DNA of 64,000 nucleotides from Octopus sinensis. Lineage: Eukaryota. The notes under the pieces were generated by a model that was given only the letters and a program-made list of their open reading frames with translations, was not told the origin of the DNA and made no database searches. The stretch spans positions 10,230,001 through 10,294,000 of the forward strand of contig NC_043024.1 of NCBI RefSeq assembly GCF_006345805.1, read 5' to 3'. This document shows positions 2,995 through 50,377 of this stretch, in pieces. The position numbers were made by a program, and so were the translations under genes. Every line of letters begins with the position of its first letter. Position 1 is the first letter of the stretch.

Positions 2995-2997
2995 GAT

Positions 2998-11373: not shown

Positions 11374-11477
<104 letters not shown>

Positions 11478-11829: not shown

Positions 11830-11903
<74 letters not shown>

Positions 11904-12360: not shown

Positions 12361-12437
12361 ATGTTGGTGGATTGCCTTCTTATCGTGTTTATATCAATTT
12401 GTACGGCGCTACTCGGTGAAGGTAGGTAAAGTAGACC

Positions 12438-12468
<31 letters not shown>

Positions 12469-12484
12469 ATGTATAATGTGAGAG

Positions 12485-12520
<36 letters not shown>

Positions 12521-12621
12521 ATGTGAGTATATATATATATATATATAATTTATAAATGAATTATATTATTACATATACACAAATTTACATATCTATCTAC
12601 CAACGCACCCTATATATATTA

Positions 12622-12674
<53 letters not shown>

Positions 12675-13318
12675 ATATATATATATACATACACACATGC
12701 ATATATATGCATAAATATATATGTATGTTTATATATATACATACATACATATATATATATACCTGTACATCATCTCCAAACCTTCCGATATATATATATA
12801 ATATATATATATACATACATACATGTATATATATATATATGTATGTGTATATATATATATATACATAGGATCATTTCACTTTGACCGGCAGATTTTTAAA
12901 ATAATTTCTTTGTAACTAAACACATATGTATGTATATATATATATATATATACACACACATAGATATATCTATGTATATGTGGTAGTATATATATATATA
13001 TATATGTACGTATGTATGTATAATATTTTATAAATGAATTATATAAATATACACGAATTTACATATCTATCTACCAACGCATATTTGTATCTCTCTTTCT
13101 ATATATATATATATACATTCATATTCAGACACACCTACATTATATAGGTACTACTTAAAAAGAGTGGTCCCGGTGCGCGCACTCGCGCATCCGTGCTAGC
13201 TAGTCGTGACTTGTGTTTTATTTACTTTGCTAGATAGTCGTAGGATCGACTAGTCACGACTAGCTAACTCGAGTACGCGCACCGGTTCCACTCTCCTTAA
13301 GTAGTACCCATATATATA

Positions 13319-13370
<52 letters not shown>

Positions 13371-16300: not shown

Positions 16301-17622
16301 GTTTGACTTTTGCTTTATATTTGTACAAGTTGGCTCCAAGTCTCACCCAGAGACCTCAAGAGACAACAGGTTAGAAGTTCATGTTGGTGTTATGCCTAGG
16401 GTGCCATATATTTGGTTTTGTACATAGTGTTGTACTAGTGAATGTTTAACAAACCATTATTAATATTGTTATTATTATCAATATGAGTAAAATGCTTAGA
16501 GCTATTTCATCCAGCTATTTCACATTTTGAGTTCCAATTCCACTGGAATTGCCTGTCATCCTTTTGGGGTTGGTAAATTAAGTACCTGTGACACACTGGG
16601 GTCAGTGTAATTGACTAGTCCCCTCCCACCAAATTTCAGGCCTTGTGCCTATAGTAGAAAGAATTATTATTATTATTATTATTATTATTGAGTGAGAGAG
16701 CAGTGCATGCCATCAAAGTGACACTGGGGTAAAATATACAAAGCCCAGTATACCCATCATGACTACCCGTCTGATAAGGGTACACCAGGCACATGCATCA
16801 CAACCATATGTGCGCGACATGGTGATCTCGTGTCAAGATAAACAGCGCTTGACCTTGCAGGTGGGGCCCAGTTAGAATTTTCTTCTGGTTGAGTAACCCA
16901 TCCCGCTTAAAAGGTCCCTGTTTAAGGATGTTGAAAGAACCACCCATGTTTCCAGAGGTGAATTATTCAAACCTCTAAGAATTCCTCTCAACACATGGCT
17001 ATGATGCTCCCCCACTACTTCTGCTCATGATCAGAGATGCACATATCGTCAGCCACTAAGGGACATGCTCAACTGGTTAAGGTCAAACAACTGACAAACA
17101 AATCTGTGGTATTGAGCAGAATATTTGCTGTAGCCCATCTTTTATACCAAGACAAAACAATGTACATGATAACACTTCCAATCAGTTAAGATCAGAAGCC
17201 ACGAGAGCCACTGCCTGGTACTGCATCAGGGTATTGAGCCACTGCCTGGTACTACATCAGGGCATTTATTATCATTATTATTATTAGTAGTAGTAGTAGT
17301 ATGTATAAGGATAAGTTGGAACAATTATTAAAATCTCTTGAGATTCATTTGACTTTCTTGGGAAAGTTATCGTCTCGATTGATCTGCATGGTGTAAAACG
17401 TGTCATGATGCTTCAAAACGATTTTGAGTTGAAGAAACGGAACCATAAAAGAATTGTCTCCTGCACTCAACAGACCATATTTGTCCAGTCTCCCACTCAC
17501 ACTCTTCCTCATAATCTGTTTCTTCCTTTCTCTCTCAGAACGCCAAGAAGAGAAACTGAAAAACAACAGTCGAGATTTATCATTGGTGAGTCTATTGATT
17601 ACTTTATAAATACATATATATA

Positions 17623-17676
<54 letters not shown>

Positions 17677-20600
17677 CATATATATATATACATATATACA
17701 TATATATACATACATATATATATGACTGAAGAAGGGGAATTTTCCTTGTTTTGTATGTTCTGTACTCTATTTTTTCATTGTTTAAGAAAAATGTCCATTT
17801 CCTTGGTTTTGTGTTTATGTTTTCGTTTCTCATTGTGTTCGACGTCCTTTTGATGTCCTGTACCCATATATGCGTGTATATATACACGTAGAGGTAGGTA
17901 CGTACATGTATGTATGTATATATGCATATGTTTTATTTCATTTATTAATTTATTATATATAAATACATATATATACAATTGCAGTGTGGAAGGTGTTTAT
18001 AAGCCATTTAAGAAACACAAAAAACGTTAAATTCACTTTAACATTTAAGTTTAATTTGTCAAAATATTTTCGTCGCTTTGAGACCACGATGACCTGTTCA
18101 CTGACAAAATTCGACAAATTAAATTTAAATGTTGAAGTGAATCGAACAGTTTTTGTGTGTTTCTTAAATGGCCTATAAACACCTTCCACCAGGCTGCAAT
18201 TGCTTTCGTTCCAGCACACGATCTCAGATCAGGTCACTTGCTATGCAAGTACATCTCCGTAATATATATATTGTGTTGTCTGGAAAGTTTGTGCTGATTT
18301 ATAGTAGCTTACCTTTCGACTTAGTTTAGAACATGTTTGAGTCCATAAAATAGGATTTGACTACACCTCCATTTAGAGAAAAGTGGAAGAAGGTTTATGT
18401 TTCTATAACCTGTGTTAATTCTGTAACCTTTTAAAATGGAAGACAAGAAAGTTCATTTTCGGCACTTGATGCTTTTCTTTTTTCCATAAAGGGAAAAATG
18501 TCTCACAACCAACCAAAGAAATATGCGCAGTTTGCGGTGATGTTTCTTTATCCGAAAGAACTGTACGGAAGTGGTTCGCAAGGTTCCGAGCTGGAGATTG
18601 TAGCCATATTGATAAAGAGCGATCAGGCAGACCATCCACTACAGATGATGACCAAATCAAGTCATTAATTGAGAATAACCCAAGAATTGGCAGAAAGCCT
18701 CAGCCTATCAAAATCCGTCATTCATAAGCACCTGGTAAAGCTTGGGTACACAAATCACTACGATGTTTGGGTACCACATGAGTTGAGTGAGAAGAACCTT
18801 TTGGATCGCATTTCCATCTGTGATTTGCTTTATAAATGGAATGAAAACAGATACACAAACACACACATACATATATACAATGGGCTTCTTTCAGTTTCCA
18901 TCTACCAAATCCACTCACAAGGCTTTGGTTGGCCCGAGGCTATAGTAGAAGACATTGCCCAAGGTGCCATGCAGTGGGACTGAACCCAGAACCATGTGGT
19001 TTGTAAGCAAGCTACTTAGCACACAGCCATCTTGATAAACATTACAAAAATTTTGCTGTAAAATTCCAGTGAAATAATCCCAGTAGAAAGAACTGACTTA
19101 TCCAAATTTCCAGAAAAGCACCCAAATTTCTATTTATTTATTTGTTTATTTATTACAGGTTAAAATGAAATCCATGTTTGCAATTGGTTTTGCTTTCACT
19201 GCACTTCTGAGTATGTTCAATTCCATGTAAGTATTTTGGATATTTCTGTCTATTTGTGGCCTACGCCAAGGGTGTAACCCAGCCACTTATGCGTGCCCTT
19301 CCTTCATTAGACACTAAACTCTGCTTGCGAAGACTTGTTGAGGCAAGTGAAATCGAAATCGAATTCAATGACTGGCATCTGTGCTAGTTGAGCGCTAAGA
19401 GTACCATACAAGTGAGATCGGGGCCAGAGCAACAAGCTGGCCTCCGAGCCGATTGCATGTAAAGAACACCATTCGAGCAAGGTTGTTGCCAGTGCCGCTG
19501 GACTGGCTCCTGTGCAGGTCGCACATAAAAAGCACCATTTGTGCGTGGCCGTTGCCAGTACTGCCTGACTGGCTTTCATGCCGGTGGCACGTAAAAGCAC
19601 CCACTACATTCTTGGCGTGGTTGGTGTTAGGAATGGCATCCAGCTGTAGAAACTCTGCCAGATCAGATTGGAGTCTGGTGCAGCCATCTGGTTTGCCAGC
19701 CCTCAGTCAAATCATCCAACCCATGCTAGCATGGAAAGCAGACGTTAAATGATGATGATGATGTGGAGGGATCCTAACTGCCCCCCACGTGACCAAAAGT
19801 GTACTGACACATCAATAAAATAAAATAACTGTGTGAACTATCGGCAGTTGACAGCGTTGATCGTTCATATTGGATTATTGTGTTAGCTTAATATCATACT
19901 TACGTTTGGTGTAGTACAGAGTATTTTCTGCGTAAACATATTAATTCTGCTAATGGTTATTCTAGATAAACATATCCAAATATTTATTTCTTCGCCCTTG
20001 TGCACACCCCAACATCATCATGACATTATTGGCGATGAGATAAGACAGAACATATATATATATTATAATATTAGGGAGTATAGCTCCAAACTTACAGGGA
20101 AAAATTCAATTTAATATTAGATCAAATTTCTCAATATAATATATATAAATTAGAGAAAAACCACTATTATGCAATTCAAACAATGATAGACATGAACCAA
20201 ATCATAAATAAAAAATAAAATATATTTTTATAAAACATATAACTAGATCGCAAAAAGTACAAAAATGAATAAACAATATATAAAAAGTAAAAAGATTATG
20301 TACGTTTCATGGCTATAATTTAAATTCGAATTACAATTGAATTTGAATTTAATCGAAAAACAATTCAAATTAAAATTATAGTCACTCCTCAGGTCAACAA
20401 TAATAACAATGTTTAAAGGGTTAATAATGTTACGACTGTTCATTTGTTCATGGCTGTTAATTTTTATTGTTTTTTTTTCTTTTCTTGTCTTTTCTTTTTA
20501 TTCTTACCCAATGAAAACAATCTAGTTTCGATGGCCGAGTGGTTGCTAAGTTACCATTTACTCCAATTTCACTGATGCAAGGTCTTTCACATCGAAATCT

Positions 20601-23600
20601 AGCCGGAGACGATTACACTCATTGCTCGTTATCTTCCTCTACATTCTATGTACAATGTCTATACGCCAGGTAAGAACTCTTTCATCTTCACACATTTGCC
20701 ATCATCATCATCATCATTTATTAGCGATTGAGGGAACTGCCCCACGCTAGCGGTTGAGGGAACCTGTGGAAGAGGTAGACCCAGGAAGACCTCGGAGGAG
20801 GTGGTGAAGCATGACCTTTGAACATTGGGCCTCACCGAGGCAATGACCAGGACCTTTGGAACTATGCTGTGCTTGAGAAGACTCGGCAAGCTCAAGTGAG
20901 ACCATAACCTCGTGGCCTATGCCAGGGGTGTAACCAGCCCACTTGTGCATACCTTTCCTTCATTGGACACTAAACTCTGCTTGTGAAGACCTGTTGAGGC
21001 AAGTGAAATCGAAATCAGATTCGATGACTGACATCCGTGCTAGTGGAGCGCTAAGATTACCATACGAGTGTGATTGTTGACAGAGCAACAAGCTGGCCTC
21101 CAAGCCAATGGCACATTAAAAAACACTATTTGAGCGTGATCGTTACCTGTGTTGCCTTACTGATACTTATGCTGGTGGCACGTGAAAAAACATTTTAGCA
21201 AGGACATTGCCAGTGCCGCTGGACTGGCTCCTGTGCAGGTGGCACATAAAAGGCACCATTTGAGCGTGGCCATTGCCAGTACCGCCCGACTGGCCCTCGT
21301 GCCGGTGGCATGTAAAAGCACCCACTACATTCTTGGCGTGGTTGGTGTTAGGAATGGCATCCAGCTGTAGAAACTCTGCCAGATCAGATTGGAGTCTGGT
21401 GCAGCCATCTGGTTTGCCAGCCCTCAGTCAAATCATCCAACCCATGCTAGCATGGAAAGCAGACGTTAAATGATGATGATGATGTGGAGGGATCCTAACT
21501 GCCCCCCACGTGACCAAAAGTGTACTGACACATCAATAAAATAAAATAACTGTGTGAACTATCGGCAGTTGACAGCGTTGATCGTTCATATTGGATTATT
21601 GTGTTAGCTTAATATCATACTTACGTTTGGTGTAGTACAGAGTATTTTCTGCGTAAACATATTAATTCTGCTAATGGTTATTCTAGATAAACATATCCAA
21701 ATATTTATTTCTTCGCCCTTGTGCACACCCCAACATCATCATGACATTATTGGCGATGAGATAAGACAGAACATATATATATATTATAATATTAGGGAGT
21801 ATAGCTCCAAACTTACAGGGAAAAATTCAATTTAATATTAGATCAAATTTCTCAATATAATATATATAAATTAGAGAAAAACCACTATTATGCAATTCAA
21901 ACAATGATAGACATGAACCAAATCATAAATAAAAAATAAAATATATTTTTATAAAACATATAACTAGATCGCAAAAAGTACAAAAATGAATAAACAATAT
22001 ATAAAAAGTAAAAGATTATGTACGTTTCATGGCTATAATTTAAATTCGAATTACAATTGAATTGAATTTAATCGAAAAACAATTCAATTAAAATTATAGT
22101 CACTCCTCAGGTCAACAATAATAACAATGTTTAAAGGGTTAATAATGTTACGACTGTTCATTTGTTCATGGCTGTTAATTTTTATTGTTTTTTTTTCTTT
22201 TCTTGTCTTTTCTTTTTATTCTTACCCAATGAAAACAATCTAGTTTCGATGGCCGAGTGGTTGCTAAGTTACCATTTACTCCAATTTCACTGATGCAAGG
22301 TCTTTCACATCGAAATCTAGCCGGAGACGATTACACTCATTGCTCGTTTATCTTCCTCTACATTCTATGTACAATGTCTATACGCCAGGTAAGAACTCTT
22401 TCATCTTCACACATTTGCCATCATCATCATCATCATTTATTAGCGATTGAGGGAACTGCCCCACGCTAGCGGTTGAGGGAACCTGTGGAAGAGGTAGACC
22501 CAGGAAGACCTCGGAGGAGGTGGTGAAGCATGACCTTTGAACATTGGGCCTCACCGAGGCAATGACCAGGACCTTTGGAACTATGCTGTGCTTGAGAAGA
22601 CTCGGCAAGCTCAAGTGAGACCATAACCTCGTGGCCTATGCCAGGGGTGTAACCAGCCCACTTGTGCATACCTTTCCTTCATTGGACACTAAACTCTGCT
22701 TGTGAAGACCTGTTGAGGCAAGTGAAATCGAAATCAGATTCGATGACTGACATCCGTGCTAGTGGAGCGCTAAGATTACCATACGAGTGTGATTGTTGAC
22801 AGAGCAACAAGCTGGCCTCCAAGCCAATGGCACATTAAAAAACACTATTTGAGCGTGATCGTTACCTGTGTTGCCTTACTGATACTTATGCTGGTGGCAC
22901 GTGAAAAAACATTTTAGCAAGGACATTGCCAGTGCCGCTGGACTGGCTCCTGTGCAGGTGGCACATAAAAGGCACCATTTGAGCGTGGCCATTGCCAGTA
23001 CCGCCCGACTGGCCCTCGTGCCGGTGGCATGTAAAAGCACCCACTACACTCTCAGAGTGGTTGGCGTTAGGAAGGCCATCCAGCTGTAGAAACTCTGCCA
23101 GATCAGATTGGAGTCTGGTGCAGCCATCTGGTTCGCCAGCCCTCAGTCAAATCGTCCAACCCATGCTAGCATGGCAAGCAGACGTTAAACGATGATGATC
23201 ATCATCATCATTTATAATCCACTTTTCCATGCTTGCCTGAGTCAGACAGTTTTATTTGAGTCATGTTTTCTACAGCCAGATGCCCCATCTGTGGTCAGCC
23301 CTTGCCTGTTTCCGATCTCAGTTTATATTTCCCTATACCCAGACATGTTTTTGCAGAGCATTGGAAGTGAATGACACTGTTTATATGACAGAGACACTTG
23401 TTTACAAATACCATTGTCATGTCAAGACACAAACATACTCATACACATTTGAAATCTGGGATCTTTACCTTTTGACCGACAGATTAAAAAATAATTCCTT
23501 GTAACTAAACACTTTCAAACTTCAGACACTGGTCGAAAGTGTCATATAAAATATCTTTTACTCTTAGCATTTTTGAGAAAAACTTATATTTACTTAGTTA

Positions 23601-24115
23601 TTTCACCTTAAAGTTCTCGTATTTTGGTAATTTCAACCAATCAATGACGTGTATTCAGCTGAATAAAATACACACACACGCACACATATAGACAACAGGC
23701 TTCTTTCAGTTTCTGTCTACCAAATCCAAACAAGGCATTGGTCGGCCCGAGGCTACAGTAGAAGACACATGCCTAAGGTGCCACGCAGTGGAACTGAACC
23801 CGGAACCATGTGATTGGGAAGCAAGCTTCTTACCATAACCCACTCCTGCAGTTACGTTAGCACCCATTTCACTGTTCGTTTTCATGCCACAAGGCGTCCC
23901 TGAGCATTTACCCCCTTCCCTTCACCACCACCATTTTCTATGTATTTTTTTTTCTTTTTGTTGTTACTTTTTGTTTCATTTTAATATTCGTTGTTATTTC
24001 TAATTACTGTTGTTAATTACAGAACATCCAAAAGCTACTTGGTTTGGCCCCTTCAAGAGTTGCTAACAAACAAGGAGTCGGATTCTTCTCACCCCCACCT
24101 CAATTTGTTAAATGA
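12361..24115 (+). CDS. TMCO1: TMCO1 (transmembrane and coiled-coil domains 1; ER GEL/translocon component), 7 coding exons, 183 aa
   Basis: Exons 12361-12421, 14745-14822, 15871-15930, 17539-17585, 19159-19226, 22244-22388 and 24023-24115 all have GT-AG borders and join in frame (552 nt): [50 protein letters not shown]...[27 protein letters not shown]...[13 protein letters not shown]...[28 protein letters not shown]...*. AATAAA at 24149. Confidence 0.96.
13147..13308. mobile_element. Internally deleted MULE-like MITE
   Basis: TIRs ggtactac...gtagtacc, same family as 36300-36608. Confidence 0.7.
16691..17265 (-). mobile_element. Unclassified insertion flanked by (AAT)n on both sides, probably a LINE 3' UTR
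   Basis: (ATT)n at about 16663-16690 and 17266-17285; no protein motif recognised. Confidence 0.45.
17976..18202. mobile_element. Fold-back MITE-like element
   Basis: caattgcagtgtggaaggtgtttata... is matched by ...tataaacaccttccaccaggctgcaattg. Confidence 0.65.
18269..18846 (+). mobile_element. Mariner relic, left TIR and transposase N-terminus
   Basis: TIR ttgtgttgtctggaaag; [16 protein letters not shown] and WVPHEL motifs, frameshifted. Confidence 0.85.
19262..19762 (+). mobile_element. RTE-type LINE 3' end (3' UTR with (GAT)n tail)
   Basis: Homologous to the 3' UTR following the RT ORF at 44568-45830. Further copies at 20738-21483, 22457-23200, 25362-25665, 49730-50050 and 50805-51230. 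Confidence 0.75.
19591..23048. repeat. Tandem duplication, about 1.72-kb unit (19591-21329 approximately equals 21312-23048)
   Basis: Offset of 1721 decreasing to 1719; I saw only four differences, all 1-nt indels. Confidence 0.95.
20526..20669 (+). other. TMCO1: Duplicate TMCO1 exon 6 (144 nt, 1-nt deletion)
   Basis: Same splice sites as 22244-22388; reads tcgttatc instead of tcgtttatc. Confidence 0.9.
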
Positions 24116-26250: not shown

Positions 26251-27128
26251 AACTGAATAAACTAAATAAATTCATCAGAACAATCTGTGTTTTATTTCAA
26301 TATAAAAATAGTTTTTGTTTTCCAAAATATGACATTTTTTTTTCAAGAAAGCAACATGGTATTGGTGATTGTTTGTGTGTGAGAGTGCCAATGTATATGT
26401 GTGTGTATATATACATGCATATATGAGCATCTTTGTGAGTATATGAGTGTATATGCTTATGTGTATTGGTGCATGTGAAAGTGTTTGTGTGTATATATAC
26501 GTAAACACACGTGTATACATATATATATATATATAATTTAGAAAAAAAACACCTTTTATCAATTCAATAATGAAAAATTAAATTATACCATTTAGAAAAA
26601 TTACATATTCTAGAAAGATTAAATATAATTTTTCTAAATGGTATTTAATTTTTCATTAGTGAATTGTTAAAAGGTGGGTTTTTTTCTAATTTATATATTA
26701 TATTTTGTGAAATTTGATTTAGTATTTCTAAATTGAATTTTTCCCTGTAAGTTTGGAATATTCCCTCATATTATTATTATTTGATATATATATATATATG
26801 TATATATATATACATACACATGTCTGTATTTGTGAATGTTAGTATGTGCTCACTGAACATGTATATGTATACAGGTGTGTGTATATAAGTCTGTGTGTAT
26901 GTCTGCATGTGCTTGTTGAGTTTATCTATTTGTATGGGGTTTATGTATATACATGTATACAAAACAGAAAGGAATTTTTTTTTTATACAAGTCCTGTTTT
27001 TTGGTATGGAACAGTCCATTATGCAGTGGAAGATCTCATTACTTTTGTTCAGGAATTCCATTCATGAAAAAATTTCACTTTTGCAATTAGTGGGAAGGCG
27101 AATAATTTGGGCAGAACCAGATTTTTTT

Positions 27129-30100
27129 CTACAAGTACGGGGCCCATCCAATGTACATCTGGCACAAGAGTTTTTCATTTGTTGCCTCATGAATTAAATA
27201 GTTGACCTGACCCTCAACAGATAAGGGCAGGCCCCTTGGTTTGGTTTTTGATGCGTGGATTCCTCTCATGCGATGCTCAATCATCTGGACATGGGTCATT
27301 GCTTGCTCGTTGGTAATCTCACCAGAACTGACTTGATGTGATCTTTGGCCCTTAGTCAGTTTCTGCCACTCCACAAGAGGGTCATAAATAAATGGTTTTA
27401 GGACACTCATCAGAGGGTCCATTTGGTTCCGTAGTACTTTAAGGGTCACTTCACACGCCTGTCGGAAAATGCCTTCATATCCCATTGGTCCCATAGCTTT
27501 GACCATGTTGTTGGTCAAGCGGAACGGTACGCGCTCAGGCCACTCGAACGTCTCCCCTTTATTGAAGAGACAATTGAAATCGACATGGAGGCAGTCACCG
27601 GTTGTGGAGTCCATCAGTATGTTCTCGCCGTGTCTGTCCCCAAGTCCGAGGATATATCCGACCATGTCCATCACAGCAGAGGTTCGGGCGTATGCCAGTC
27701 TGGAATTGTACCAAGCTGTCGGGTCCGGAAATGTCCGCAGGAACCATTCGTAGAACACACTAGGGTGAAGATGAAGGAGCATTTTGAACAGTTCTAGTTT
27801 CCTATCAAGCGGGGCCTGAAGAGCTGGGATGTGATTCTTCAACTCCCGGTTACTGATTTGTAACCCCTTTTCGCGGTACAATTTGCGTAATATATACTGC
27901 AGACCACTCGTGTTGTTCACCCATTCTATGATGCCACATTCTTCATTCAGTGGAATCACGGTGTATGTGCGTATATGAAGCTGCCGCTTTCTGGCCTCGG
28001 GGTCTTTGCGTAGGAACTTGTTGACAATCGTAGTGAACTCCATCAAACGACAGTCCTTTCTCAAATCGTCCTTTGGTTTACACATCATTACATACAGGTG
28101 ACCATCGCTACCCTTTATCGTTATCTTTTTGGGTTTCTGTAACGAAGGTAAGATCTCAATTGTATCTTCAAAACTGCTGATATAAACGGTGTCGCCCGGG
28201 AAAGGATCGTGGTCGACTTTGTTATCAGTTTTCGTCATGGGCAATGTAACCGTCATCGAAGATTGCAAGGGGACGATTATGTTGCTGAAATTATGGTCGT
28301 CAAGGAGACGTTTAAGTGACTTGAAGTGCTGGGACAAACTCAAAGGCTGAGTGTCTGGGCAGTGGCGCTCAGACAATTCCAGCAGACGTTCTGTAAGTTT
28401 ATTGGCATCAAGTAAAAATTTGCCGAGTTCTTCCTTCATCAGTTTCGCTTGGTTGAATATCTCTTGGCATCTCTTTACCCGTTTTGGATATGACGATTTC
28501 GAGACAGCCATCAGCATCCAAACAGCTTGAGCAGGGAACGTGTACAGCAGTTTTGCAATTATTTTCACCAGGTGACGAAACACGTCCGAGTTTGCATGAC
28601 AGATGCGAGAGATGAGCTGTGAAAAAGCCGTGAAGAGTTGGTACGGCGCCAGTTTGCGACTTAGCTGTTCGATCACTTTGTTCAAATTCTGCAGAATGGT
28701 TTTCTGAGACTGCAGTTTTTGCATGTGCGATGCTTGATTCGACGTCTGGTCACGGAGCTCTGACTGAACGACAGTGGAACCATAATCCAGCCACAGACTA
28801 AGGAGCCTTGGAAGCGATTGGTAAATGTATTGGTTTCCGTACTGCAGTGATGTCCCGTAATTCTTCACAACAAATATATTGAACTCTCCTTGCTTCACTG
28901 AGTTTTCGTTGTCATCTATCAAGTTGTTCTTCATCTTGTCGTAGTATTTAGCAAGGAAGAAGTAGCCATCTTCCCATTCCGAACACGAGTCCGTGACATC
29001 ACGGTACTGCTTCAAAACGGTGTTGCTATCCGTGTTGGAAGTCTCATCGCAGTAATGCGTGTACAACAACTGCGCCTGAGCATAGGTGAACAGTTTTTTT
29101 TTGGCGCTCTTTGACATGTCCCTTTTCAGTTGATTCAGATTAGGGAAGTGCTCAGCCATGCCCTTCTCGAGGCAGGAGAGCGCTTGATCATTCTGACCCT
29201 TTTCCCAGAACCATTTGGCTTTCTCCAGGCAATATTCCGGCAGATTGGAGGAAGCTGCTTGAATGAGGGAGCCGTATGCCGTTTGGAGGTAACCGGCTTC
29301 GCGGGCAGCCGTCGCCGTATCAAGGAGCCATTTCCCTATCTGCGGGGAACAATTGGAACAGCTTTCCAGTGTGATGAGAGTACGTCGTAAAGTGAGTACA
29401 GGTTCCTGAATGCGAAAAGGAGACTGCATCAGCTTCGAACGTGCATCCCACTGCAATAGAAGCTCGTCAAGACTCACAGAATCAGATGAAATTTGTTGCT
29501 TGCTTTTGCTCCATTTGAGCTGAGTCTTGGAGTCGAATATAATTTTTTTCGCCTGCTCAATCTCATTGAGCATATGTAGTCGTACAATGTTTTCATAACC
29601 ACGAAGATATGAGAAGCTTTCCATGCTAGCTGCCGATAAGGGCCCCATTATTTCTATACGTGCGCTATTCAAATGCTTCTGATAGCTCTCTTCCTGTCGG
29701 TCCTTGATGGCCAAAAGAATTTTCCCCAAGCTCACGACCCAGTCGTTGCTTTCCTTCTCCAACTTCACATAAGATTCCAGTTTGGTCCAATCTCCGAGTT
29801 TCGACGTGGCCTCAATACGATAGGTGTTCAGTTGTGTGCTCCATGAAGGATGGTTAGCAATGACGCCGTCAGCATGAAGGAGGGCCTTGTTCAGCTGACC
29901 CAATTCCATCAAACTCCGCAGCCAACCATGATGATGAGAGATCTCTTCAGGCTCTAACTGCACAGCTCTTTCGTAACAAGCCTCCGCATCCTGGTACTGG
30001 CCAATGCTTTGGTGGGCCAAAATCTGTTGCACAAGGGTCGGCTGTGCTTGCCGAATGGCTGCAACCCCTGCTACACCATCATGTTCGTCTAACGCAACAT

Positions 30101-33100
30101 AGATGCGTTGCAACAGATCGAGGTGTTGTTGGATATTGCAATCGTTGTTTCTGATGAAATGTTCAAAGTGCATCAATGCACGTGTGAATGCATTGCAGTT
30201 GAAGCAAGCTTCTGCAAGGACGTCTTGCGGGATGTGATTCAGGAATGCGTTTACTGTTCTGTAACTGGAGTCTTTGAGATACACCGGTTCCTTAGACACA
30301 GGCATTTCGGCTACCTTAAGCTGTGCCCGGTTTGTCCTCCATTTCAATAAATAATCAAGAACAGAGAAAATGGTTTGGGCACACATGTGGCGCATATCAG
30401 TCACACTACCCTGTCGAGTATCCGACTTCCTTATCTGGTGTAACACTTCCATGATCTCATTGTGGATGTCTTGGATGTCCCCTTCGGTGCCATCTAGCAA
30501 GACTTGGGTGACGACATGTGGCAGTATATATAAAGCGATTGAAGGATCGTACCGTGTTATAGGACTGCATACTTGAAACACACGTAAGGGGTGGTTCTGT
30601 TGGACCCTAGAAGACAAATAAGTGGTCCAGATACATATCCATTCCTTGTACTTGCTGCCCTTCATGCTGCCATAAATCGGTTTCTGAAGATGATCCCAGC
30701 TGAAAGACGATGATGAAATATACTTGGAATTAAGCAGAGGTTGTAATATTTCTTGGACATGCTCCGGAAAACGATTCCAAAGTCTCCGTTCGGAACCATG
30801 TTCGTTATTTTCTTCGGGTTTGTCGCTTATTCTATAAATCTGCAAAAGATCCTGCAGCGCTAGAGATGCACAATCCTGCACCCGAGTTTCAGTAGCTGCA
30901 AGGAAAGCACGGATTATTTCATTTATAATTCCAATAGCAAAATTATCGTCTTCAGTACTTGCTTGGAATTTGGCCATTTCTTCTTTTGGATTATTCGATG
31001 TCAACTCGAGGCGTCCGGGATCGATAGCGCCGATCTCTCCAAGACAATCTCCAATCAGACATCGAACCCTGTGATCCGGAACCTTGCAAATGGATAAAAG
31101 CACGGAGATCAGCTGCGATACTATCGGATCCGCAGTTTCGTTGTCAAGCATGTACTGATGCAGCTGTCTTTGACTGCTATGAAGCAAATTCCTCAAATTT
31201 GACAAGGCATGGATTTGGACATCCAAGCTTTCGTGTGTCACACCACGTAACGTATGAGTGATCTTTGTTCTTAAATCCGATTGGCTGGAGAGGCTACTGG
31301 AGTATTGCTTCAAAACGTAATTCACATTGGACAGTTCTGGAATGTCGGGTAAAAAATATATTTCTTGGAAGTGACCACACAAAGCATCTTTGTTCTCAAT
31401 GATGAGGTAGTTGAAGATCTCAGCACACTGTGCAGGAAGCTGCTGAATCAACGGTAAAAGAGTGGCAGATATCGGTGACAACATGTCACCCAGAGCTGGC
31501 AATTCCACGCTTCGGATGAATGAGTTCCACGCTTGACAAGCAATTGCCAGGAAATCTTTCTCATCAAATCGTAGACTAATTCGGAGAGTATTCATAATTT
31601 TGTATCTCACAAACGTGATGTGTTTTGCTCCCATTAGCTGGATGATGGAATTTAAACTATCCAACGTGAGCTTTTTCTCTTCAATTGGAATGCTAGAAAT
31701 CAATAATTGAGAATCGAAGAAAGCCAAAATTCCAAGTAATCGAGGCTGGAGATAGTTGGCCATATCTTCTGTCGTGGTTATCTGTCCAGGATAGAAATCA
31801 TCGTAGGAGCAGAGACGCTGTAAACCTTTGAAGACTTCGGCGTAATTAGTACTCAAGTAGAGCAAGAGTTCGTTATGGACTCGTTGGAAGTCAATACGAA
31901 GCAGGTAAGTTAGTTCAATTTCAGTCTCGGCAAAATGGAACTGGAGGGCTTTTGCAATTTCCTGTTCGTTGTGATGTCGAATCAGATAAGAAAAAATGTA
32001 TTTCGTGGAAGAAATTAGAAGCTTCTTGCGACTTGGCACTTGTAAAAGAGTAGCAAGAAGCTTTATTAGAGATGATGCCGTCTGGGAAGCCATGGCAACC
32101 AATTGGGGAAGTAGGAATCGCTCGGTGCTATGTATGAAGGTTCTGATATCCACGTAATCAAACACATTGCTGACCTCTTTCAGTTTCTGTTCAGCTGTTT
32201 TGCCAATGTTTAATTTACAGGATTCATCCATTGTCTTGACCAGGAACATACAGACGGGTTGTTGGTAATTCATAAATATATTAAAGGGTTTCTCTCCTGC
32301 TTTTTTGGCTCTTGAAATGCCCTGAAGTTGCATGTAGGCCACAGCGCTGGAAACAGGAACATCAGAAACTATGTTTTCCAAAAGGAACAGAGTGACGTCC
32401 AACAGAAGAGGTCCACTTGAATATTTACCAAGCAGACCAACGGTCATCAGGATCGATTTCTGTAGCTTCACACTTTTCGTGTCTTTTAAATGTGCCAAAG
32501 AATTCTTCAGTTTCTCAAAGACAATATTTGCAACATCAAGACCAGAGACTTTGAGCAGATTCCAACAGCAGTTGCTGAACAAAATGCAAATATCGTAATC
32601 AGGATCGTTAATTAATTGCAGTGAGTAATTTAGCAAATTAAGAGCCCACTGTTCAGTGAGTTTTATCTCTACGTGGTTATAGACACGAAGCAGGCTGCGT
32701 GCCAGGGCCCTCCGATATGTTGCATCATTCATGTCTCTGTTACCAGAAAAACAAAGAAACATCTCCTGTATGATCGGTAACTTGGTCTGACTGACCAACT
32801 TCTTATGATTTGTCTTAGCATCGTCACACTGCTTGCATTTCAACTTGAAAAGTTCAAAGATGTTCACTTCACCCCCGTTCGAATCAAACGAATTACTCTG
32901 GCATATTTCAGTCTCTCCCGACAGAACGCAAACAAGTTCACCAAACACCGATGCCAAACTGTTGTCCACAGTGGAATTCTTCATGTTAAATAATGGCAAG
33001 AGCAACTCTGTCACGAGGTAAGCAAAGTTGTCTCCAAGAGTATGTAATAACACAACAGAGGAGCGAATTCCCTGCAGAATCAATGGAAGGCTTAAATTAT

Positions 33101-35108
33101 TGGCTAAAACTGATTTGTAGACGTGACAACGCCACTGACCAGCGATATATTTGGGGATCCAGCACAAAACTTCCATACAGATTTGACATGTGAGGTCATC
33201 TAAGAGAGGAGACAATTGGCCACTTATTTCCAACATCGGTTTGAGGTCAGCTGAATGTAGATCAAGCCAAGAAGCATTGTTGGCAAGCCATGGTAAAGAA
33301 AGTAGCACAACAAACTCACTTACCAATTCCGGCACTGCGGCGCTGAAATCGTTCACAATCAACAAAGCAGCAACAGATTTTGCCACAACCGGAAGACTGC
33401 AATTCAAAAGTTCCTTGGCCTTAGATTCATCAACGTTCTGAAGACTTGTACAAAGAGAAAACAAATTCTTCCATAGATAAGAGATTTCTGTTAATTCGTC
33501 TTTAGAGAGCCATTCGGTGAATTTCTGGTCAGTACTGTAAACTTTTGGTTGACCGTCCTTAGTATTCTTCTGTGAAGGATTGTCTTTGAAAGAATGGAAC
33601 AACACTACGGATACTTCCACAATAACCTGTACGCCAGTTAACATACATAACACCCCGTTGCTGTCATTGTACGACTTGCTTTTAAACGTTTCTAACTTTC
33701 GCTTAATTTCCGTGAATAGTTTCGATTTATCTTCTGGAGTTATTTTTTTTCTGCTATTGTTGCTGGTTTTGCTTTTTAAATGAGGGAGATATGGCAGTTT
33801 AGCTTTTTTGGGCGGATGTTCTTCAGTTTCCTTAGACAAATCATTCTCATTGAGACAGGAGGATTCCATTTCCCAAGACACCAACAGACATAAGTTCTGC
33901 ACCAGAAACTCTTTGTTGTAAACCCTGCCAACCAAATGACACAGCTTCTCCTTTAAAACATTAATAACTGGGCTGTAAACTGAATCAAATATATTCTGAA
34001 TTTGCTTTAACTTGATCAAAATATGGTTGAGAAATGAGCTGACGGCACTACACATGTCGGCAGATGGTTCTTGCTGCAACTTCTGAAGCCAGCCATAAAG
34101 ACTCATAAATTCTATAAACTTGTTCAACATGAGGTCCAAATTAGCTATGTCTAAATGATTACCAATACCAGAAGAATCAGCTTTGAGGAGAGCATTCAGG
34201 GTCTTAACATAGGCTGTCTCCATTTGAGACAATTCTTTTGATGTTAGTTCTGCCTGGTCTCCATACATCATCGGTGGAATCGCTACCAGAACAGCTACGA
34301 GATACTCAAGCAGCTCAAATTCCGGCACGCCATGAAGAAGCAGTAACTGTTCAATAACTTGTAACGAAGCAGCTTTCAATGGGACGTCTCCGAATTCGAC
34401 CTGGGCCAAAAGACTGGGACACAAAACAGACAGTAGTCGAGTATTCCACCCGCCGTTGAAGTATCGAACCTGTTGCGAGAACACCAACGTCAAATTGCTT
34501 TGCAGGATCTCACACGACTCGCAACCCAGTTTGATAACAGCTTGGCGTATTTCTGTGTTCTGTTCAGACGGAGGTAGGAAATTAGAAATCAGACGTAAAT
34601 CTACGTTAAAAAGATTCAAAACAATCGATCTGTTTTCATCGATAGATTCCAATCCAGAAGACTGAGTGACTGCGAGTTCACTAAGACAACAGGCCAGTTT
34701 TTCAAGGATTTTATGATACAGGTAAGGTTCGTTTATCTTCAAACTATTAAGAAACTGGACGATCAAGGCAACGCATTTCGGGTGGAGCTGGTGGCAGCCG
34801 GGGTGAGTGAAGAGGCTGAGAAGCTGCGATGTGAACCAGTACATAAATGCTTCGCATTCGTCGGGTGAGTCCTGGCTGGGTTGCTGGTTCTTGGTGAATT
34901 TAAACTCGTCTAAGATGTCCGAGGTAATTTTCAGCAAGAAGTGACACATAGATGCTGTGGGGCCAGCGAGTTTTTTGGCCACCGAGTCGAGGTCATAGAG
35001 AGACTGACCAATGTGTAACATGGCATATGTCAATTGACTCGTGTCGCTGGTCGTCTTGTATTTCTTGAGTAATTCTAGCAACAGATTGAAATCCATTGTC
35101 GATGCCAT
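27129..35108 (-). CDS. ATR: Serine/threonine kinase ATR (PIKK family), single-exon CDS, 2659 aa
   Basis: Uninterrupted ORF; ATG at 35108 in good context (gtgATGG; the ORF-track start is an upstream GTG). HEAT/FAT region, kinase motifs KPKDDLRKDCRLMEF, GLGDRHGENIL and HVDFNCLFNKG, and ATR-type FATC LPLSVEGQV...LCQMYIGWAPYL*. Confidence 0.97.
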   Translation of the reverse strand: MASTMDFNLLLELLKKYKTTSDTSQLTYAMLHIGQSLYDLDSVAKKLAGPTASMCHFLLKITSDILDEFKFTKNQQPSQDSPDECEAFMYWFTSQLLSLFTHPGCHQLHPKCVALIVQFLNSLKINEPYLYHKILEKLACCLSELAVTQSSGLESIDENRSIVLNLFNVDLRLISNFLPPSEQNTEIRQAVIKLGCESCEILQSNLTLVFSQQVRYFNGGWNTRLLSVLCPSLLAQVEFGDVPLKAASLQVIEQLLLLHGVPEFELLEYLVAVLVAIPPMMYGDQAELTSKELSQMETAYVKTLNALLKADSSGIGNHLDIANLDLMLNKFIEFMSLYGWLQKLQQEPSADMCSAVSSFLNHILIKLKQIQNIFDSVYSPVINVLKEKLCHLVGRVYNKEFLVQNLCLLVSWEMESSCLNENDLSKETEEHPPKKAKLPYLPHLKSKTSNNSRKKITPEDKSKLFTEIKRKLETFKSKSYNDSNGVLCMLTGVQVIVEVSVVLFHSFKDNPSQKNTKDGQPKVYSTDQKFTEWLSKDELTEISYLWKNLFSLCTSLQNVDESKAKELLNCSLPVVAKSVAALLIVNDFSAAVPELVSEFVVLLSLPWLANNASWLDLHSADLKPMLEISGQLSPLLDDLTCQICMEVLCWIPKYIAGQWRCHVYKSVLANNLSLPLILQGIRSSVVLLHTLGDNFAYLVTELLLPLFNMKNSTVDNSLASVFGELVCVLSGETEICQSNSFDSNGGEVNIFELFKLKCKQCDDAKTNHKKLVSQTKLPIIQEMFLCFSGNRDMNDATYRRALARSLLRVYNHVEIKLTEQWALNLLNYSLQLINDPDYDICILFSNCCWNLLKVSGLDVANIVFEKLKNSLAHLKDTKSVKLQKSILMTVGLLGKYSSGPLLLDVTLFLLENIVSDVPVSSAVAYMQLQGISRAKKAGEKPFNIFMNYQQPVCMFLVKTMDESCKLNIGKTAEQKLKEVSNVFDYVDIRTFIHSTERFLLPQLVAMASQTASSLIKLLATLLQVPSRKKLLISSTKYIFSYLIRHHNEQEIAKALQFHFAETEIELTYLLRIDFQRVHNELLLYLSTNYAEVFKGLQRLCSYDDFYPGQITTTEDMANYLQPRLLGILAFFDSQLLISSIPIEEKKLTLDSLNSIIQLMGAKHITFVRYKIMNTLRISLRFDEKDFLAIACQAWNSFIRSVELPALGDMLSPISATLLPLIQQLPAQCAEIFNYLIIENKDALCGHFQEIYFLPDIPELSNVNYVLKQYSSSLSSQSDLRTKITHTLRGVTHESLDVQIHALSNLRNLLHSSQRQLHQYMLDNETADPIVSQLISVLLSICKVPDHRVRCLIGDCLGEIGAIDPGRLELTSNNPKEEMAKFQASTEDDNFAIGIINEIIRAFLAATETRVQDCASLALQDLLQIYRISDKPEENNEHGSERRLWNRFPEHVQEILQPLLNSKYISSSSFSWDHLQKPIYGSMKGSKYKEWICIWTTYLSSRVQQNHPLRVFQVCSPITRYDPSIALYILPHVVTQVLLDGTEGDIQDIHNEIMEVLHQIRKSDTRQGSVTDMRHMCAQTIFSVLDYLLKWRTNRAQLKVAEMPVSKEPVYLKDSSYRTVNAFLNHIPQDVLAEACFNCNAFTRALMHFEHFIRNNDCNIQQHLDLLQRIYVALDEHDGVAGVAAIRQAQPTLVQQILAHQSIGQYQDAEACYERAVQLEPEEISHHHGWLRSLMELGQLNKALLHADGVIANHPSWSTQLNTYRIEATSKLGDWTKLESYVKLEKESNDWVVSLGKILLAIKDRQEESYQKHLNSARIEIMGPLSAASMESFSYLRGYENIVRLHMLNEIEQAKKIIFDSKTQLKWSKSKQQISSDSVSLDELLLQWDARSKLMQSPFRIQEPVLTLRRTLITLESCSNCSPQIGKWLLDTATAAREAGYLQTAYGSLIQAASSNLPEYCLEKAKWFWEKGQNDQALSCLEKGMAEHFPNLNQLKRDMSKSAKKKLFTYAQAQLLYTHYCDETSNTDSNTVLKQYRDVTDSCSEWEDGYFFLAKYYDKMKNNLIDDNENSVKQGEFNIFVVKNYGTSLQYGNQYIYQSLPRLLSLWLDYGSTVVQSELRDQTSNQASHMQKLQSQKTILQNLNKVIEQLSRKLAPYQLFTAFSQLISRICHANSDVFRHLVKIIAKLLYTFPAQAVWMLMAVSKSSYPKRVKRCQEIFNQAKLMKEELGKFLLDANKLTERLLELSERHCPDTQPLSLSQHFKSLKRLLDDHNFSNIIVPLQSSMTVTLPMTKTDNKVDHDPFPGDTVYISSFEDTIEILPSLQKPKKITIKGSDGHLYVMMCKPKDDLRKDCRLMEFTTIVNKFLRKDPEARKRQLHIRTYTVIPLNEECGIIEWVNNTSGLQYILRKLYREKGLQISNRELKNHIPALQAPLDRKLELFKMLLHLHPSVFYEWFLRTFPDPTAWYNSRLAYARTSAVMDMVGYILGLGDRHGENILMDSTTGDCLHVDFNCLFNKGETFEWPERVPFRLTNNMVKAMGPMGYEGIFRQACEVTLKVLRNQMDPLMSVLKPFIYDPLVEWQKLTKGQRSHQVSSGEITNEQAMTHVQMIEHRMRGIHASKTKPRGLPLSVEGQVNYLIHEATNEKLLCQMYIGWAPYL

Positions 35109-35183
35109 CACAATTAGAATGAAAAATATGACACTTTCCGTTGAGTGTGTACGAATTAATTATTATATCACTTTCTCAAAAGA

Positions 35184-35490
35184 CTACAGAGAAGAATTAA
35201 TCAAGAACTGTTCATTTTTACTCCATCGATAATTAAAAAACAATCAATTTAAAGCTACATCACATCATTAAGGAAAGATGCTTAATTGAACAAAGACGAT
35301 ACGGGACAAAAGAAATCAATTAAATAAAAGCAAGGTGCGTCTTCCTAGTGAAAGGTACTCGGCTGTGGTTTTCGCCGATGTCCCCTACATTACGATCGTG
35401 TTTATAGAAAGGGGTTTAGTTCATATTAACTCGGTGTTTACCTGGGGTTTTGCCGGAGCCACGAGGCCGAGATGACATTTGCCGCCATTT
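35184..35490 (-). promoter_or_regulatory. Putative ATR 5' UTR intron and first exon / promoter
   Basis: Acceptor ttcttctctgtag ends at 35184, donor cag|gtaaac at 35441, and a YY1-like AAATGGCGGC at 35481-35490. Confidence 0.45.
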
Positions 35491-35664
35491 CCGCATTCAA
35501 TACATAAACAATTTAGAGTCACCTCCCTTGCTTTTGGTCCGTTTTCGTTTTTCTTCTTCTCAGAGCCAAGGAGTTCGCGGGTTCGAATTCCAGCATTTCG
35601 AAATAAAATTAAATGAATGGGAGAAGAAAAAAACAGCATATTAATTTGTAATGATTCAAGTATG

Positions 35665-36096
35665 GGCAATCTTTCGTCTCTAGTAGACCTTTCCGTCGAT
35701 TTCCGTAAAAAAAAAAACTTCTTTTTTATTTTTACATATGGGCTTGCGGGAACTTTTGAAGTAATGAGAGCGAAAGAGACTAAGAGAAAGCGATTGTATG
35801 ACGAGGGAAGTTCTTTTGAAGTTACCGTGCATGGGAAGCATTGATGTACATGTGTGTGTGTGTTTGATGGGGTGTGGGAGACAGACAGTATGTTGTGTAA
35901 GTGAAGTGCTTCTGTTAGTGTGTGTGAAGAGACAGAGTAATGTGTGAAAGAAAGAGATAACTGAAATTTTTTACTCGGTGTATGTGTATATATATATATA
36001 TGTATATTACTTCAAAAGTTCCCGCAAGCCCATATGTAAAAAAAAATTTTTTTTACGGAAATCGACGGAAAGGTCTACTAGAGACGAAAGATCGCC
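35665..36096. mobile_element. MITE with about 100-bp TIRs, GG...CC termini, 8-bp TSD
   Basis: caagtatg at 35657-35664 and 36097-36104; arms 35665-35765 and 36005-36096. Confidence 0.8.

Positions 36097-50346: not shown

Positions 50347-50377
<31 letters not shown>

What the first reader, a model, noticed from the sequence alone, without database searches (positions are those of the whole stretch)
27129..35108. Intronless full-length ATR in an intron-rich genome
The 2659 codons have no intron, stop or repeat insertion. Vertebrate ATR has more than 40 exons, and the neighbouring TMCO1 keeps 6 introns in 552 nt. This implies retroposition of an 8-kb mRNA or wholesale cDNA-mediated intron loss in an essential checkpoint kinase. 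I see no poly(A) tail or TSD, so the event would be old, and the intact ORF suggests it is functional.
Basis: partly seen in the sequence, partly recalled or inferred. Interest (0 to 1): 0.8.

Follow-up and report, generated by a model that had tools for sequence, protein, structure and literature searches.

The report
Intronless ATR gene shared by coleoid cephalopods
Octopus, argonaut and cuttlefish genomes all carry their only detected copy of the DNA-damage checkpoint kinase ATR as one uninterrupted 8-kb coding exon, whereas abalone and scallop split it into 60-odd exons, so an ancestor of these cephalopods most likely replaced the gene with a reverse-transcribed mRNA copy.

Summary
Window 27129-35108 (- strand) is one open frame of 2659 codons that encodes a complete ATR kinase. 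The window is Octopus sinensis CM016886.1. TMCO1, 3 kb away, has 7 coding exons.

The intronless state is not specific to octopus. The ATR coding sequence is also uninterrupted in genomic DNA of O. bimaculoides, Argonauta hians, the cuttlefish Acanthosepion pharaonis and an unnamed decapodiform contig. Outgroups are intron-rich: Haliotis rufescens ATR has at least 63 coding blocks over 72.7 kb, and Pecten maximus ATR spans 134.6 kb.

The gene is under strong purifying selection (dN/dS 0.05-0.08). I found no second cephalopod ATR. Cuttlefish contigs that look like transcripts are colinear with the genome from end to end.

Best reading: one RNA-mediated event removed all introns before octopods and decapodiforms split. 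Retrogene replacement is more likely than in-situ conversion by cDNA, but the two cannot be separated here. ATR-TMCO1 linkage is absent in Haliotis and apparently in Pecten, but that test has low power. Nautilus could not be tested.

This is a new and unusually long member of a known kind. I found no published report of it. Interest is moderate.

The parts
27129..35108 (-). ATR coding sequence as a single exon: 2659 codons plus a TAG stop. The ATG is at 35108-35106.
   Evidence: ORF and translation; Pfam domain set; human ATR match; single one-frame tblastn hit; exact match to the NCBI protein.
33486..35000 (-). N-HEAT_ATR region (aa 37-541).
   Evidence: Pfam PF25032, E=1.2e-23.
31449..31754 (-). 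UME domain (aa 1119-1220).
   Evidence: Pfam PF08064, E=9e-16.
30015..30680 (-). M-HEAT_ATR region (aa 1477-1698).
   Evidence: Pfam PF25030, E=8e-39.
28797..29813 (-). FAT domain (aa 1766-2104).
   Evidence: Pfam PF02259, E=6e-40.
27363..28094 (-). PI3/PI4-kinase catalytic domain (aa 2339-2582). It includes the catalytic loop DRHGEN (27638-27621) and DFNCLF (27581-27564).
   Evidence: Pfam PF00454, E=8e-63; motif positions.
27132..27227 (-). FATC domain (aa 2628-2659), ending in ...GWAPYL.
   Evidence: Pfam PF02260, E=2e-16.
35109..35570 (-). Upstream region, probably 5' UTR and core promoter. It is colinear with Logan contigs from another octopodid and with O. bimaculoides genomic DNA.
   Evidence: L003 166-8842 aligns to window 35570-26939 as one HSP. 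L017 9434-18319 aligns to window 35664-26784 at 92.8%. That this region is transcribed is an inference.
35482..35488 (-). AAATGGCGGC motif, which resembles a YY1-type site, 380 nt upstream of the ATG. It occurs once, in the same orientation, upstream of ATR in three octopodid sequences, decapodiform L002 and two Sepia-type sequences.
   Evidence: Motif scan: -380, -393 and -383 (Octopus), -385 (L002), -537 and -531 (cuttlefish); absent from 1.5 kb upstream in Argonauta and 3 kb upstream in Haliotis. The YY1 reading comes from general knowledge and was not tested.
26939..27128 (-). Downstream region, probably 3' UTR. It is colinear with L003 and L004 up to a (CA)n microsatellite. It has no poly(A) relic.
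12361..24115 (+). Neighbouring gene TMCO1 (context only): 7 coding exons and 6 introns, tail-to-tail with ATR and 3 kb away.
   Evidence: tblastn with human TMCO1, whose sequence I wrote from memory, plus splice-site inspection of six of the seven exons. NCBI gene call in O. sinensis and O. bimaculoides.

Best explanation
This is the only detected, functional ATR ortholog of Octopus sinensis. It encodes a standard full-length ATR checkpoint kinase: a HEAT-repeat N-terminus, UME, FAT, the PIKK catalytic domain and FATC. Its unusual feature is its gene structure. All of the roughly 60 or more ancestral coding introns are absent. The most likely history is as follows. In the stem lineage of coleoid cephalopods, before octopods and decapodiforms diverged, a full-length ATR mRNA of about 9 kb was reverse-transcribed and became the germline gene. 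This probably happened by insertion at a new locus, followed by loss of the multi-exon parent (retrogene replacement, also called an orphan retrogene). The copy is transcribed from a housekeeping-type promoter about 400-650 nt upstream of the ATG and has been kept under strong purifying selection since.

Shown here: the intronless coding sequence in five cephalopod genome sequences, the intron-rich outgroups, purifying selection, and no second copy detected.

Inferred: a single origin, an RNA intermediate, a new locus rather than in-situ conversion, and transcription of the flanks.
For: The coding sequence is uninterrupted in genomic DNA of several cephalopods: O. sinensis, O. bimaculoides L017 10001-17980, Argonauta hians L001 9875-17884, 2669 codons, Acanthosepion pharaonis L018 6995-14911, one frame at 98.3% to P0004, and the decapodiform contig L002 10001-17938.

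Outgroups are intron-rich. Haliotis rufescens has at least 63 coding blocks in 72.7 kb. The Pecten maximus gene range is 134.6 kb.

Purifying selection is strong. dN/dS is 0.054 (O. sinensis against O. bimaculoides), 0.058 and 0.080, and every 300-codon window is at or below 0.143. The rate of protein evolution is normal relative to outgroups.

No second ATR-type protein appears. The word-indexed search returned one ATR cluster each for Octopus and Argonauta and two closely related decapodiform clusters (88% identical to each other), with no divergent second ATR. The exhaustive HMMER search of 50%-identity representatives returned one coleoid cluster, and the 20 other hits I looked up were non-cephalopod or closest to non-cephalopods. 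There are no ATR fragments in any of the flanks fetched.

Five nested cuttlefish Logan contigs with staggered ends look like transcripts. The longest, at 9479 nt, is colinear from end to end with A. pharaonis genomic DNA, which also argues against UTR introns.

ATR and its octopus neighbour TMCO1 lie on different chromosomes in Haliotis rufescens. In Pecten maximus they lie on records of different length.

A shared AAATGGCGG motif upstream of ATR in octopods and decapodiforms suggests a homologous promoter or 5' UTR, and so a single origin.

There is precedent. Retrotransposition-derived intronless SP6-9 paralogs date to the early cephalopod lineage (PMC7661307). Retrogene replacement is documented for amphioxus SYCP1 (PMC5803294).
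Against: No poly(A) relic or target-site duplication is visible. This is expected after more than 200 million years, but it means no direct retroposition hallmark is left.

The synteny argument is weak. ATR's immediate neighbours also differ between Haliotis (Peptidase_M54 and ASC) and Pecten (TENA_THI-4). They also differ among Octopus (Lectin_C and TMCO1), Argonauta (a WD40 gene) and Sepia (no gene within 10 kb). Local gene order therefore turns over quickly, and a new locus is not demonstrated.

No shared flanking gene links the octopod and decapodiform loci, so a single origin rests on parsimony and one short motif. The motif is missing in Argonauta.

LINE-type retrocopies of 9 kb without 5' truncation are rare.

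The RNA origin of the Logan contigs is inferred, not documented (one search found no paper naming the runs).

Nautilus was not found in any accessible collection, so the age of the event is bounded only on one side.
Confidence: 0.55

Rival explanations
1. In-situ loss of all introns. A full-length ATR cDNA recombined with the resident multi-exon gene by gene conversion or homologous recombination. This erased every coding intron at the original locus and kept the original promoter. The gene did not move, and no parental copy was ever lost.
For: No poly(A) tract or target-site duplication. A housekeeping-type motif lies upstream and is shared by octopods and decapodiforms, as expected if the native promoter was kept. 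There is a single copy and no trace of a parent. The protein's evolutionary rate is normal, with no post-relocation acceleration.
Against: By established knowledge, documented cDNA-mediated intron losses usually remove a few adjacent introns and are biased towards the 3' end. Here all 62 or more are gone, including the 5'-most. No ancestral neighbour of ATR from Haliotis or Pecten lies next to cephalopod ATR, and TMCO1 is on another chromosome in Haliotis. That test has low power. The motif is absent from the 3 kb upstream of the Haliotis coding start, although the Haliotis transcription start may lie further upstream.
Confidence: 0.3
2. Piecemeal loss. The introns were deleted one or a few at a time, in many independent events along the long stem lineage leading to coleoids.
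For: The stem lineage is long, and Nautilus, which could show an intermediate state, was not available.
Against: At least 62 independent exact deletions would be needed in one gene. Meanwhile neighbouring genes keep their introns: TMCO1 has 6 in 552 nt, and the lectin gene is multi-exon. No sampled coleoid keeps even one coding intron.
Confidence: 0.07
3. Independent retropositions of ATR in Octopodiformes and Decapodiformes, each followed by loss of the parent.
For: No flanking gene is shared between the octopod and decapodiform loci within 10 kb. An unidentified animal contig (L019) also carries an uninterrupted ATR ORF, so this may happen more than once in animals.
Against: It needs two rare events plus two parental losses. 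The AAATGGCGG motif sits at a similar distance upstream in both groups. Flanks also differ within octopods (Octopus against Argonauta), so differing flanks say little.
Confidence: 0.06
4. Artefact: cDNA contamination or mis-assembly produced an apparently intronless gene.
For: None found.
Against: Five separate genome sequences from different species and assemblers each show the uninterrupted ORF embedded in their own, differing, repeat-rich flanks. These are O. sinensis, O. bimaculoides, A. hians, A. pharaonis and an ENA contig. O. sinensis and O. bimaculoides are colinear across 35 kb that includes ATR.
Confidence: 0.01

Closest known systems
Retrogene replacement / orphan retrogenes, for example amphioxus SYCP1 (Garstang & Ferrier 2018, PMC5803294) and tetrapod Sowah
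   Same: An ancestrally multi-exon, single-copy gene is now present only as a single coding exon across a whole clade. No parental copy remains. The gene is under selection and probably expressed. It is flanked by genes unrelated to the ortholog's neighbours in outgroups.
   Different: The coding exon is about 8.0 kb, against about 3.2 kb for AmphiSYCP1. About 60 introns were erased. Relocation is not demonstrated here, and no co-opted bidirectional promoter was shown. Argonauta does have a head-to-head WD40 gene 1.6 kb upstream.
Intronless SP6-9b/c paralogs of cephalopods, attributed to early retrotransposition (PMC7661307)
   Same: [quoted passage not shown]
   Different: Those are extra paralogs, and the intron-bearing parent (SP6-9a) survives. 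They are short transcription-factor genes. ATR is a replacement with no surviving parent.
Reverse-transcriptase-mediated intron loss by cDNA recombination, known from yeast and from intron-poor lineages (general knowledge)
   Same: Exact removal of introns without disturbing the reading frame. No poly(A) tract or target-site duplication is expected.
   Different: Typical cases remove a few adjacent introns, biased towards the 3' end, or act genome-wide. Here a single gene lost every coding intron in an otherwise intron-rich genome.
ATR / Mec1 / Rad3 PIKK checkpoint kinases (human ATR structures, for example PDB 23ew and 9l4d)
   Same: Full domain architecture and colinearity over residues 39-2659. 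Catalytic DRHGEN and DFN motifs and the FATC end are present.
   Different: Nothing at the protein level. Only the gene structure differs from the intron-rich ATR genes examined here. Human ATR has 47 exons, from general knowledge, and Haliotis has at least 63 coding blocks.

Membership tests
ATR (PIKK family checkpoint kinase) | Ordered domain set: N-HEAT, UME, M-HEAT, FAT, kinase-proximal HEAT, PI3/PI4 kinase, FATC | tested here: met
   All seven Pfam families are above their curated cut-offs and in the right order.
ATR (PIKK family checkpoint kinase) | Full-length colinearity with experimentally characterised ATR, scoring better than ATM, mTOR, SMG1 or DNA-PKcs | tested here: met
   Human ATR scores 1868 bits over residues 39-2659. 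Mec1 scores 436 bits. ATM and mTOR score about 220-240 bits, over the kinase end only.
ATR (PIKK family checkpoint kinase) | Catalytic loop DRHxxN and the Mg-binding DFx motif intact; C-terminal FATC retained | tested here: met
   DRHGEN at aa 2491, DFNCLF at aa 2510, and ...GWAPYL at the C-terminus.
ATR (PIKK family checkpoint kinase) | Kinase activity and checkpoint function (ATRIP binding, Chk1 phosphorylation) | not testable with these tools
   This needs biochemistry or genetics. Here it is inferred only from conservation and dN/dS of 0.05-0.08.
Processed retrogene with parental loss (retrogene replacement) | Lacks all introns that the ancestral gene had in its coding region | tested here: met
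   Single ORF in five cephalopod genome sequences. At least 63 coding blocks in Haliotis and a 134.6-kb gene in Pecten.
Processed retrogene with parental loss (retrogene replacement) | No multi-exon parental copy remains in the genome | tested here: inconclusive
   Protein collections show no second cephalopod ATR, and the fetched flanks hold no ATR fragments. Whole cephalopod genomes could not be searched at the DNA level.
Processed retrogene with parental loss (retrogene replacement) | Lies at a locus different from that of the ancestral gene | tested here: inconclusive
   Octopus ATR lies next to TMCO1 and a lectin gene. Haliotis ATR lies between Peptidase_M54 and ASC genes, with TMCO1 on another chromosome. 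Micro-synteny also differs between Haliotis and Pecten and among cephalopods, so the test has low power.
Processed retrogene with parental loss (retrogene replacement) | 3' poly(A) tract and flanking target-site duplications | tested here: not met
   The longest A run in the 1 kb after the stop is 10 nt, and no duplication is evident. These marks are expected to decay over this time span, so their absence is weak evidence.
Processed retrogene with parental loss (retrogene replacement) | Transcribed and under purifying selection (a gene, not a pseudogene) | tested here: met
   dN/dS is 0.054-0.080. Transcript-like contigs cover the whole gene in cuttlefish and an octopodid. Their RNA origin is inferred.
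In-situ cDNA-mediated intron loss | Gene remains among its ancestral neighbours | tested here: inconclusive
   No ancestral neighbour was found beside cephalopod ATR, but the test has low power for the reasons given above.

The most novel reading that the evidence does not exclude
A single retroposition of a full-length ATR mRNA of about 9 kb in the coleoid, or possibly the cephalopod, stem lineage replaced an essential checkpoint kinase gene of 60 or more exons. This would be one of the longest functional retrogene replacements known. It would also be a rare genomic change that marks the clade. The copy may have been expressible on arrival because a promoter element that works from within the transcribed region (the AAATGGCGGC, YY1-like site about 100 nt inside the putative cuttlefish transcript) was carried in the 5' UTR of the mRNA.
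Probability: 0.2. Interest if true: 0.6.

Novelty: new member of a known kind. Interest (0 to 1): 0.4.

Why it matters
ATR is an essential single-copy genome-integrity kinase, and its gene is very large and intron-rich in the outgroups examined here. If all sampled coleoid cephalopods run on a processed copy, three things follow.

- Retrogene replacement is possible even for an mRNA of about 9 kb from an indispensable gene.
- The intronless state is a discrete, effectively irreversible character for dating events on the cephalopod stem. Nautilus would decide whether it marks Cephalopoda or Coleoidea.
- It is a natural test of how an orphan retrogene acquires housekeeping expression.

It also has a practical use for annotators. 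The ATR models for A. hians and A. pharaonis are truncated at internal methionines, although the ORFs run on to 2669 and 2639 codons.

It does not change what is known about ATR biochemistry.

Tried and rejected
- **Nautilus.** No Nautilus ATR could be identified. The exhaustive HMMER search with ATR residues 1-1200 gave one coleoid cluster. I looked up 20 of the other hits. The named ones were non-cephalopods: horseshoe crab, sea cucumber, sea urchin, fishes, lamprey, acorn worm, scorpion, tick and gastropods. Among the unnamed ones, the six I compared by BLAST (P0060, P0066, P0071, P0073, P0145, P0164) were no closer to cephalopods than to other animals.
- **Micro-synteny.** tblastx of the Argonauta and L002 flanks against the window gave only dispersed repeats. 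TMCO1 is not within 10 kb of ATR in Argonauta, L002 or A. pharaonis. The conserved upstream neighbour of Haliotis TMCO1 gave no match in the window.
- **RNA or DNA origin of the Logan contigs.** No paper names the SRA runs. Mismatch spectra between contigs were too sparse to show A-to-I editing.
- **Long ORFs elsewhere in the window.** Those at 1818-3893 are microsatellite artefacts. Others are reverse-transcriptase or lectin fragments. None is a second ATR.
- **Literature.** Searches for intronless or retrogene ATR in cephalopods found nothing relevant. PMC6408891 was not relevant.
- **Artefact from cDNA contamination.** Rejected, because five assemblies each have their own flanks.
Full report
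**Observation.** The window holds one very long ORF at 27129..35111 on the - strand. From the ATG at 35108 it is 2659 codons and ends in TAG at 27131-27129. Given the local base composition, 2660 stop-free codons have a chance probability of about 1e-75.

The product has the complete ATR domain series above Pfam's curated thresholds: N-HEAT_ATR, UME, M-HEAT_ATR, FAT, HEAT_ATR, PI3_PI4_kinase and FATC. It aligns with human ATR over residues 39-2659 at 1868 bits, far better than with Mec1, ATM, mTOR, SMG1 or DNA-PKcs. The catalytic DRHGEN and DFN motifs and the FATC terminus are intact.

The neighbour claim is also right. TMCO1 lies on the + strand at 12361-24115. It has seven coding exons, six introns and a 183-aa product. 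Six of the seven exons were read with their flanks and have GT/AG-type boundaries. TMCO1 and ATR are tail to tail, 3 kb apart.

**Source.** The exact protein is in NCBI on a 20,263,137-bp record. A locus fetched through the O. sinensis TMCO1 protein (GCA_006345805.1, CM016886.1) matches window 2361-34164 at 100%. The window is therefore Octopus sinensis, at about 10.23-10.29 Mb of that record.

**How widespread is the intronless state?** It is not octopus-specific.
- In O. bimaculoides the ATR gene range is exactly 7980 nt and translates to the 2659-aa protein. A C-type lectin gene lies upstream and TMCO1 downstream. The two Octopus genomes are colinear across about 35 kb around ATR.
- In Argonauta hians the annotated range is 7884 nt for 2627 aa. 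The ORF in fact opens at an ATG 126 nt further upstream, giving 2669 codons.
- In the cuttlefish Acanthosepion pharaonis, a 2639-aa cuttlefish ATR aligns to genomic DNA 6995-14911 in one frame at 98.3% without gaps. The deposited annotation covers only the last 1637 codons.
- A 58-kb ENA contig from an unnamed decapodiform, 88% identical in protein to the cuttlefish, has a 2645-codon ORF flanked by a LINE.
- tblastn of octopus or abalone ATR against every one of these loci gives a single colinear hit and no extra fragments.

**Polarity.** The abalone Haliotis rufescens ATR spans 72.7 kb. It resolves into at least 63 separate coding blocks, which cover 2465 of 2649 residues. The scallop Pecten maximus ATR spans 134.6 kb. 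From general knowledge, human ATR has 47 exons. The ancestral molluscan gene was therefore intron-rich, and the coleoid gene lost every coding intron.

**Is it the functional gene?**
- dN/dS is 0.054 for O. sinensis against O. bimaculoides. No 300-codon window exceeds 0.143. It is 0.058 for a second octopodid pair and 0.080 for the two decapodiforms.
- Identity to outgroups is only slightly below that of abalone, oyster or scallop ATR, so there has been no strong acceleration.
- The word-indexed search found one ATR cluster each for Octopus and Argonauta and two closely related decapodiform clusters, 88% identical to each other, with no divergent second ATR.
- An exhaustive HMMER search with the ATR-specific N-terminal 1200 residues found one coleoid cluster. 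The 20 other hits I looked up were non-cephalopods or closest to non-cephalopods.
- Five cuttlefish Logan contigs of 8.6-9.5 kb are nested in one another with staggered ends, which is the pattern expected of RNA-seq assemblies. Full-length scallop ATR also sits on Logan contigs of about 8.3 kb although the Pecten maximus gene spans 134.6 kb, so such contigs can only come from RNA.
- The longest cuttlefish contig, 9479 nt with 636 nt of 5' and 923 nt of 3' flank, is colinear from end to end with A. pharaonis genomic DNA at 96.5%. If it is a transcript, the gene has no UTR introns either.
- The RNA origin of these contigs is an inference. No paper names the runs.

**Mechanism.** Exact removal of 62 or more introns from one gene, while neighbouring genes keep theirs, points to a reverse-transcribed full-length mRNA. 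Two routes are possible.

*(a) Retroposition to a new locus followed by loss of the parent* (retrogene replacement, as for amphioxus SYCP1; PMC5803294).

*(b) Recombination of a cDNA with the resident gene.*

The evidence bearing on the choice is thin.
- ATR's octopus neighbour TMCO1 is on a different chromosome in Haliotis rufescens: JALGQA010000008.1 against JALGQA010000001.1. In Pecten it is on a record of different length.
- The Haliotis neighbours of ATR (Peptidase_M54, ASC) and the Pecten neighbour (TENA_THI-4) are not next to cephalopod ATR.
- However, neighbours also differ between Haliotis and Pecten. They differ among Octopus (lectin, TMCO1), Argonauta (a head-to-head WD40 gene) and Sepia (none within 10 kb). 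The synteny test therefore has little power.
- No poly(A) relic or target-site duplication remains, as expected for an event older than the coleoid radiation.

I favour (a) at about 0.55 against 0.30 for (b). My reason is that complete loss, including the 5'-most introns, is the usual signature of a retrogene, whereas in-situ conversion usually removes a few 3'-biased introns. That contrast rests on general knowledge.

Piecemeal loss, independent events in the two coleoid superorders, and artefact are minor alternatives. The artefact reading is excluded by five assemblies that each have their own flanks.

**Single origin.** This rests on parsimony plus one small observation. An AAATGGCGG(C/T)AA motif, which resembles a YY1-type site, occurs once and in the same orientation 380-393 nt upstream of the ATG in three octopodid sequences. 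It lies at -385 in the unnamed decapodiform and at -531/-537 in cuttlefish. It is absent from Argonauta and from the 3 kb upstream of the Haliotis coding start. In cuttlefish it sits about 105-120 nt inside the longest putative transcript. It may therefore have travelled with the mRNA, but this is speculation.

**Comparison with what is known.** At the protein level this is an ordinary ATR. At the gene level it fits the known category of retrogene replacement, or orphan retrogenes. There is precedent for early cephalopod retrotransposition in the SP6-9b/c paralogs (PMC7661307). It differs in scale: an 8.0-kb coding exon against about 3.2 kb for AmphiSYCP1, about 60 introns erased, and an essential checkpoint kinase. 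Four literature searches found no report of it.

**Verdict.** It is refined in one respect: the feature is shared by all coleoids sampled and arose before they diverged. It is a new, unusually long member of a known kind. Interest is moderate at 0.4. The open questions are the state in Nautilus and the choice between relocation and in-situ conversion.

Noticed in passing
window 19470-21480 and 21191-23199: A tandem duplication of about 2 kb at 98.5% identity inside TMCO1 duplicates coding exon 6 (20521-20669 and 22239-22388) together with its intron flanks. The first copy has a 1-nt deletion that breaks the frame. Only one copy of the exon is seen in O. bimaculoides. NCBI's O. sinensis 'isoform X1' is 199 aa rather than 183 aa. 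The duplication could be recent or an assembly artefact.
   Followed up: partly
window 35663-36098: A 436-bp foldback, MITE-like element with arms of about 100 nt at 98% complementarity sits about 175 nt upstream of the AAATGGCGGC motif of ATR. The alignment with O. bimaculoides breaks exactly at its edge, so it is probably a lineage-specific insertion next to the ATR promoter.
   Followed up: partly
L019 (ENA ERZ27247848, k141_318378), 2692-10758: A 14.2-kb metagenome contig from an unidentified animal carries an uninterrupted 2688-codon ATR ORF, with 2.7 kb and 3.4 kb of non-coding flank and no poly(A). Its best match is Haliotis ATR at 42%. This may be an independent case of an intronless ATR.
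   Followed up: partly
L001 9875-10000; L018 6995-10000: The deposited ATR annotations of Argonauta hians (2627 aa) and Acanthosepion pharaonis (1637 aa) start at internal methionines. The open frames continue upstream to give 2669 and 2639 codons.
   Followed up: yes
window 1819-3860: A block of microsatellites, (TG)n, (CAC)n, (ATC)n and a 14-nt unit, with strong GC skew. It creates the overlapping 150-340-aa 'ORFs' on both strands listed at 1818-3897. These are not genes.
   Followed up: yes
window, e.g. 11668-12105, 13650-14076, 24679-25072, 38556-38959, 48622-49039, 50373-50779, 54867-55283, 58806-59217: A dispersed repeat of about 400 nt, SINE- or MITE-like, is present in at least 10 copies in the window, including inside TMCO1 introns. 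A core of about 95 nt is also present in the Argonauta locus.
   Followed up: no
window 54329-54931 (-), 55870-56751 (-), 61676-62401 (+): An ORF with a C-type lectin domain lies upstream of ATR, and O. bimaculoides also has a lectin gene upstream of ATR. Two reverse-transcriptase fragments of retroelements are also present. The 60-64 kb stretch is strongly A-rich on the + strand.
   Followed up: partly
L001 1-8253 (-) and 9875 (+): In Argonauta, ATR is head to head with a WD40-repeat gene only about 1.6 kb away, which suggests a possible shared bidirectional promoter. This gene is not found in the 29 kb upstream of ATR in O. sinensis.
   Followed up: partly
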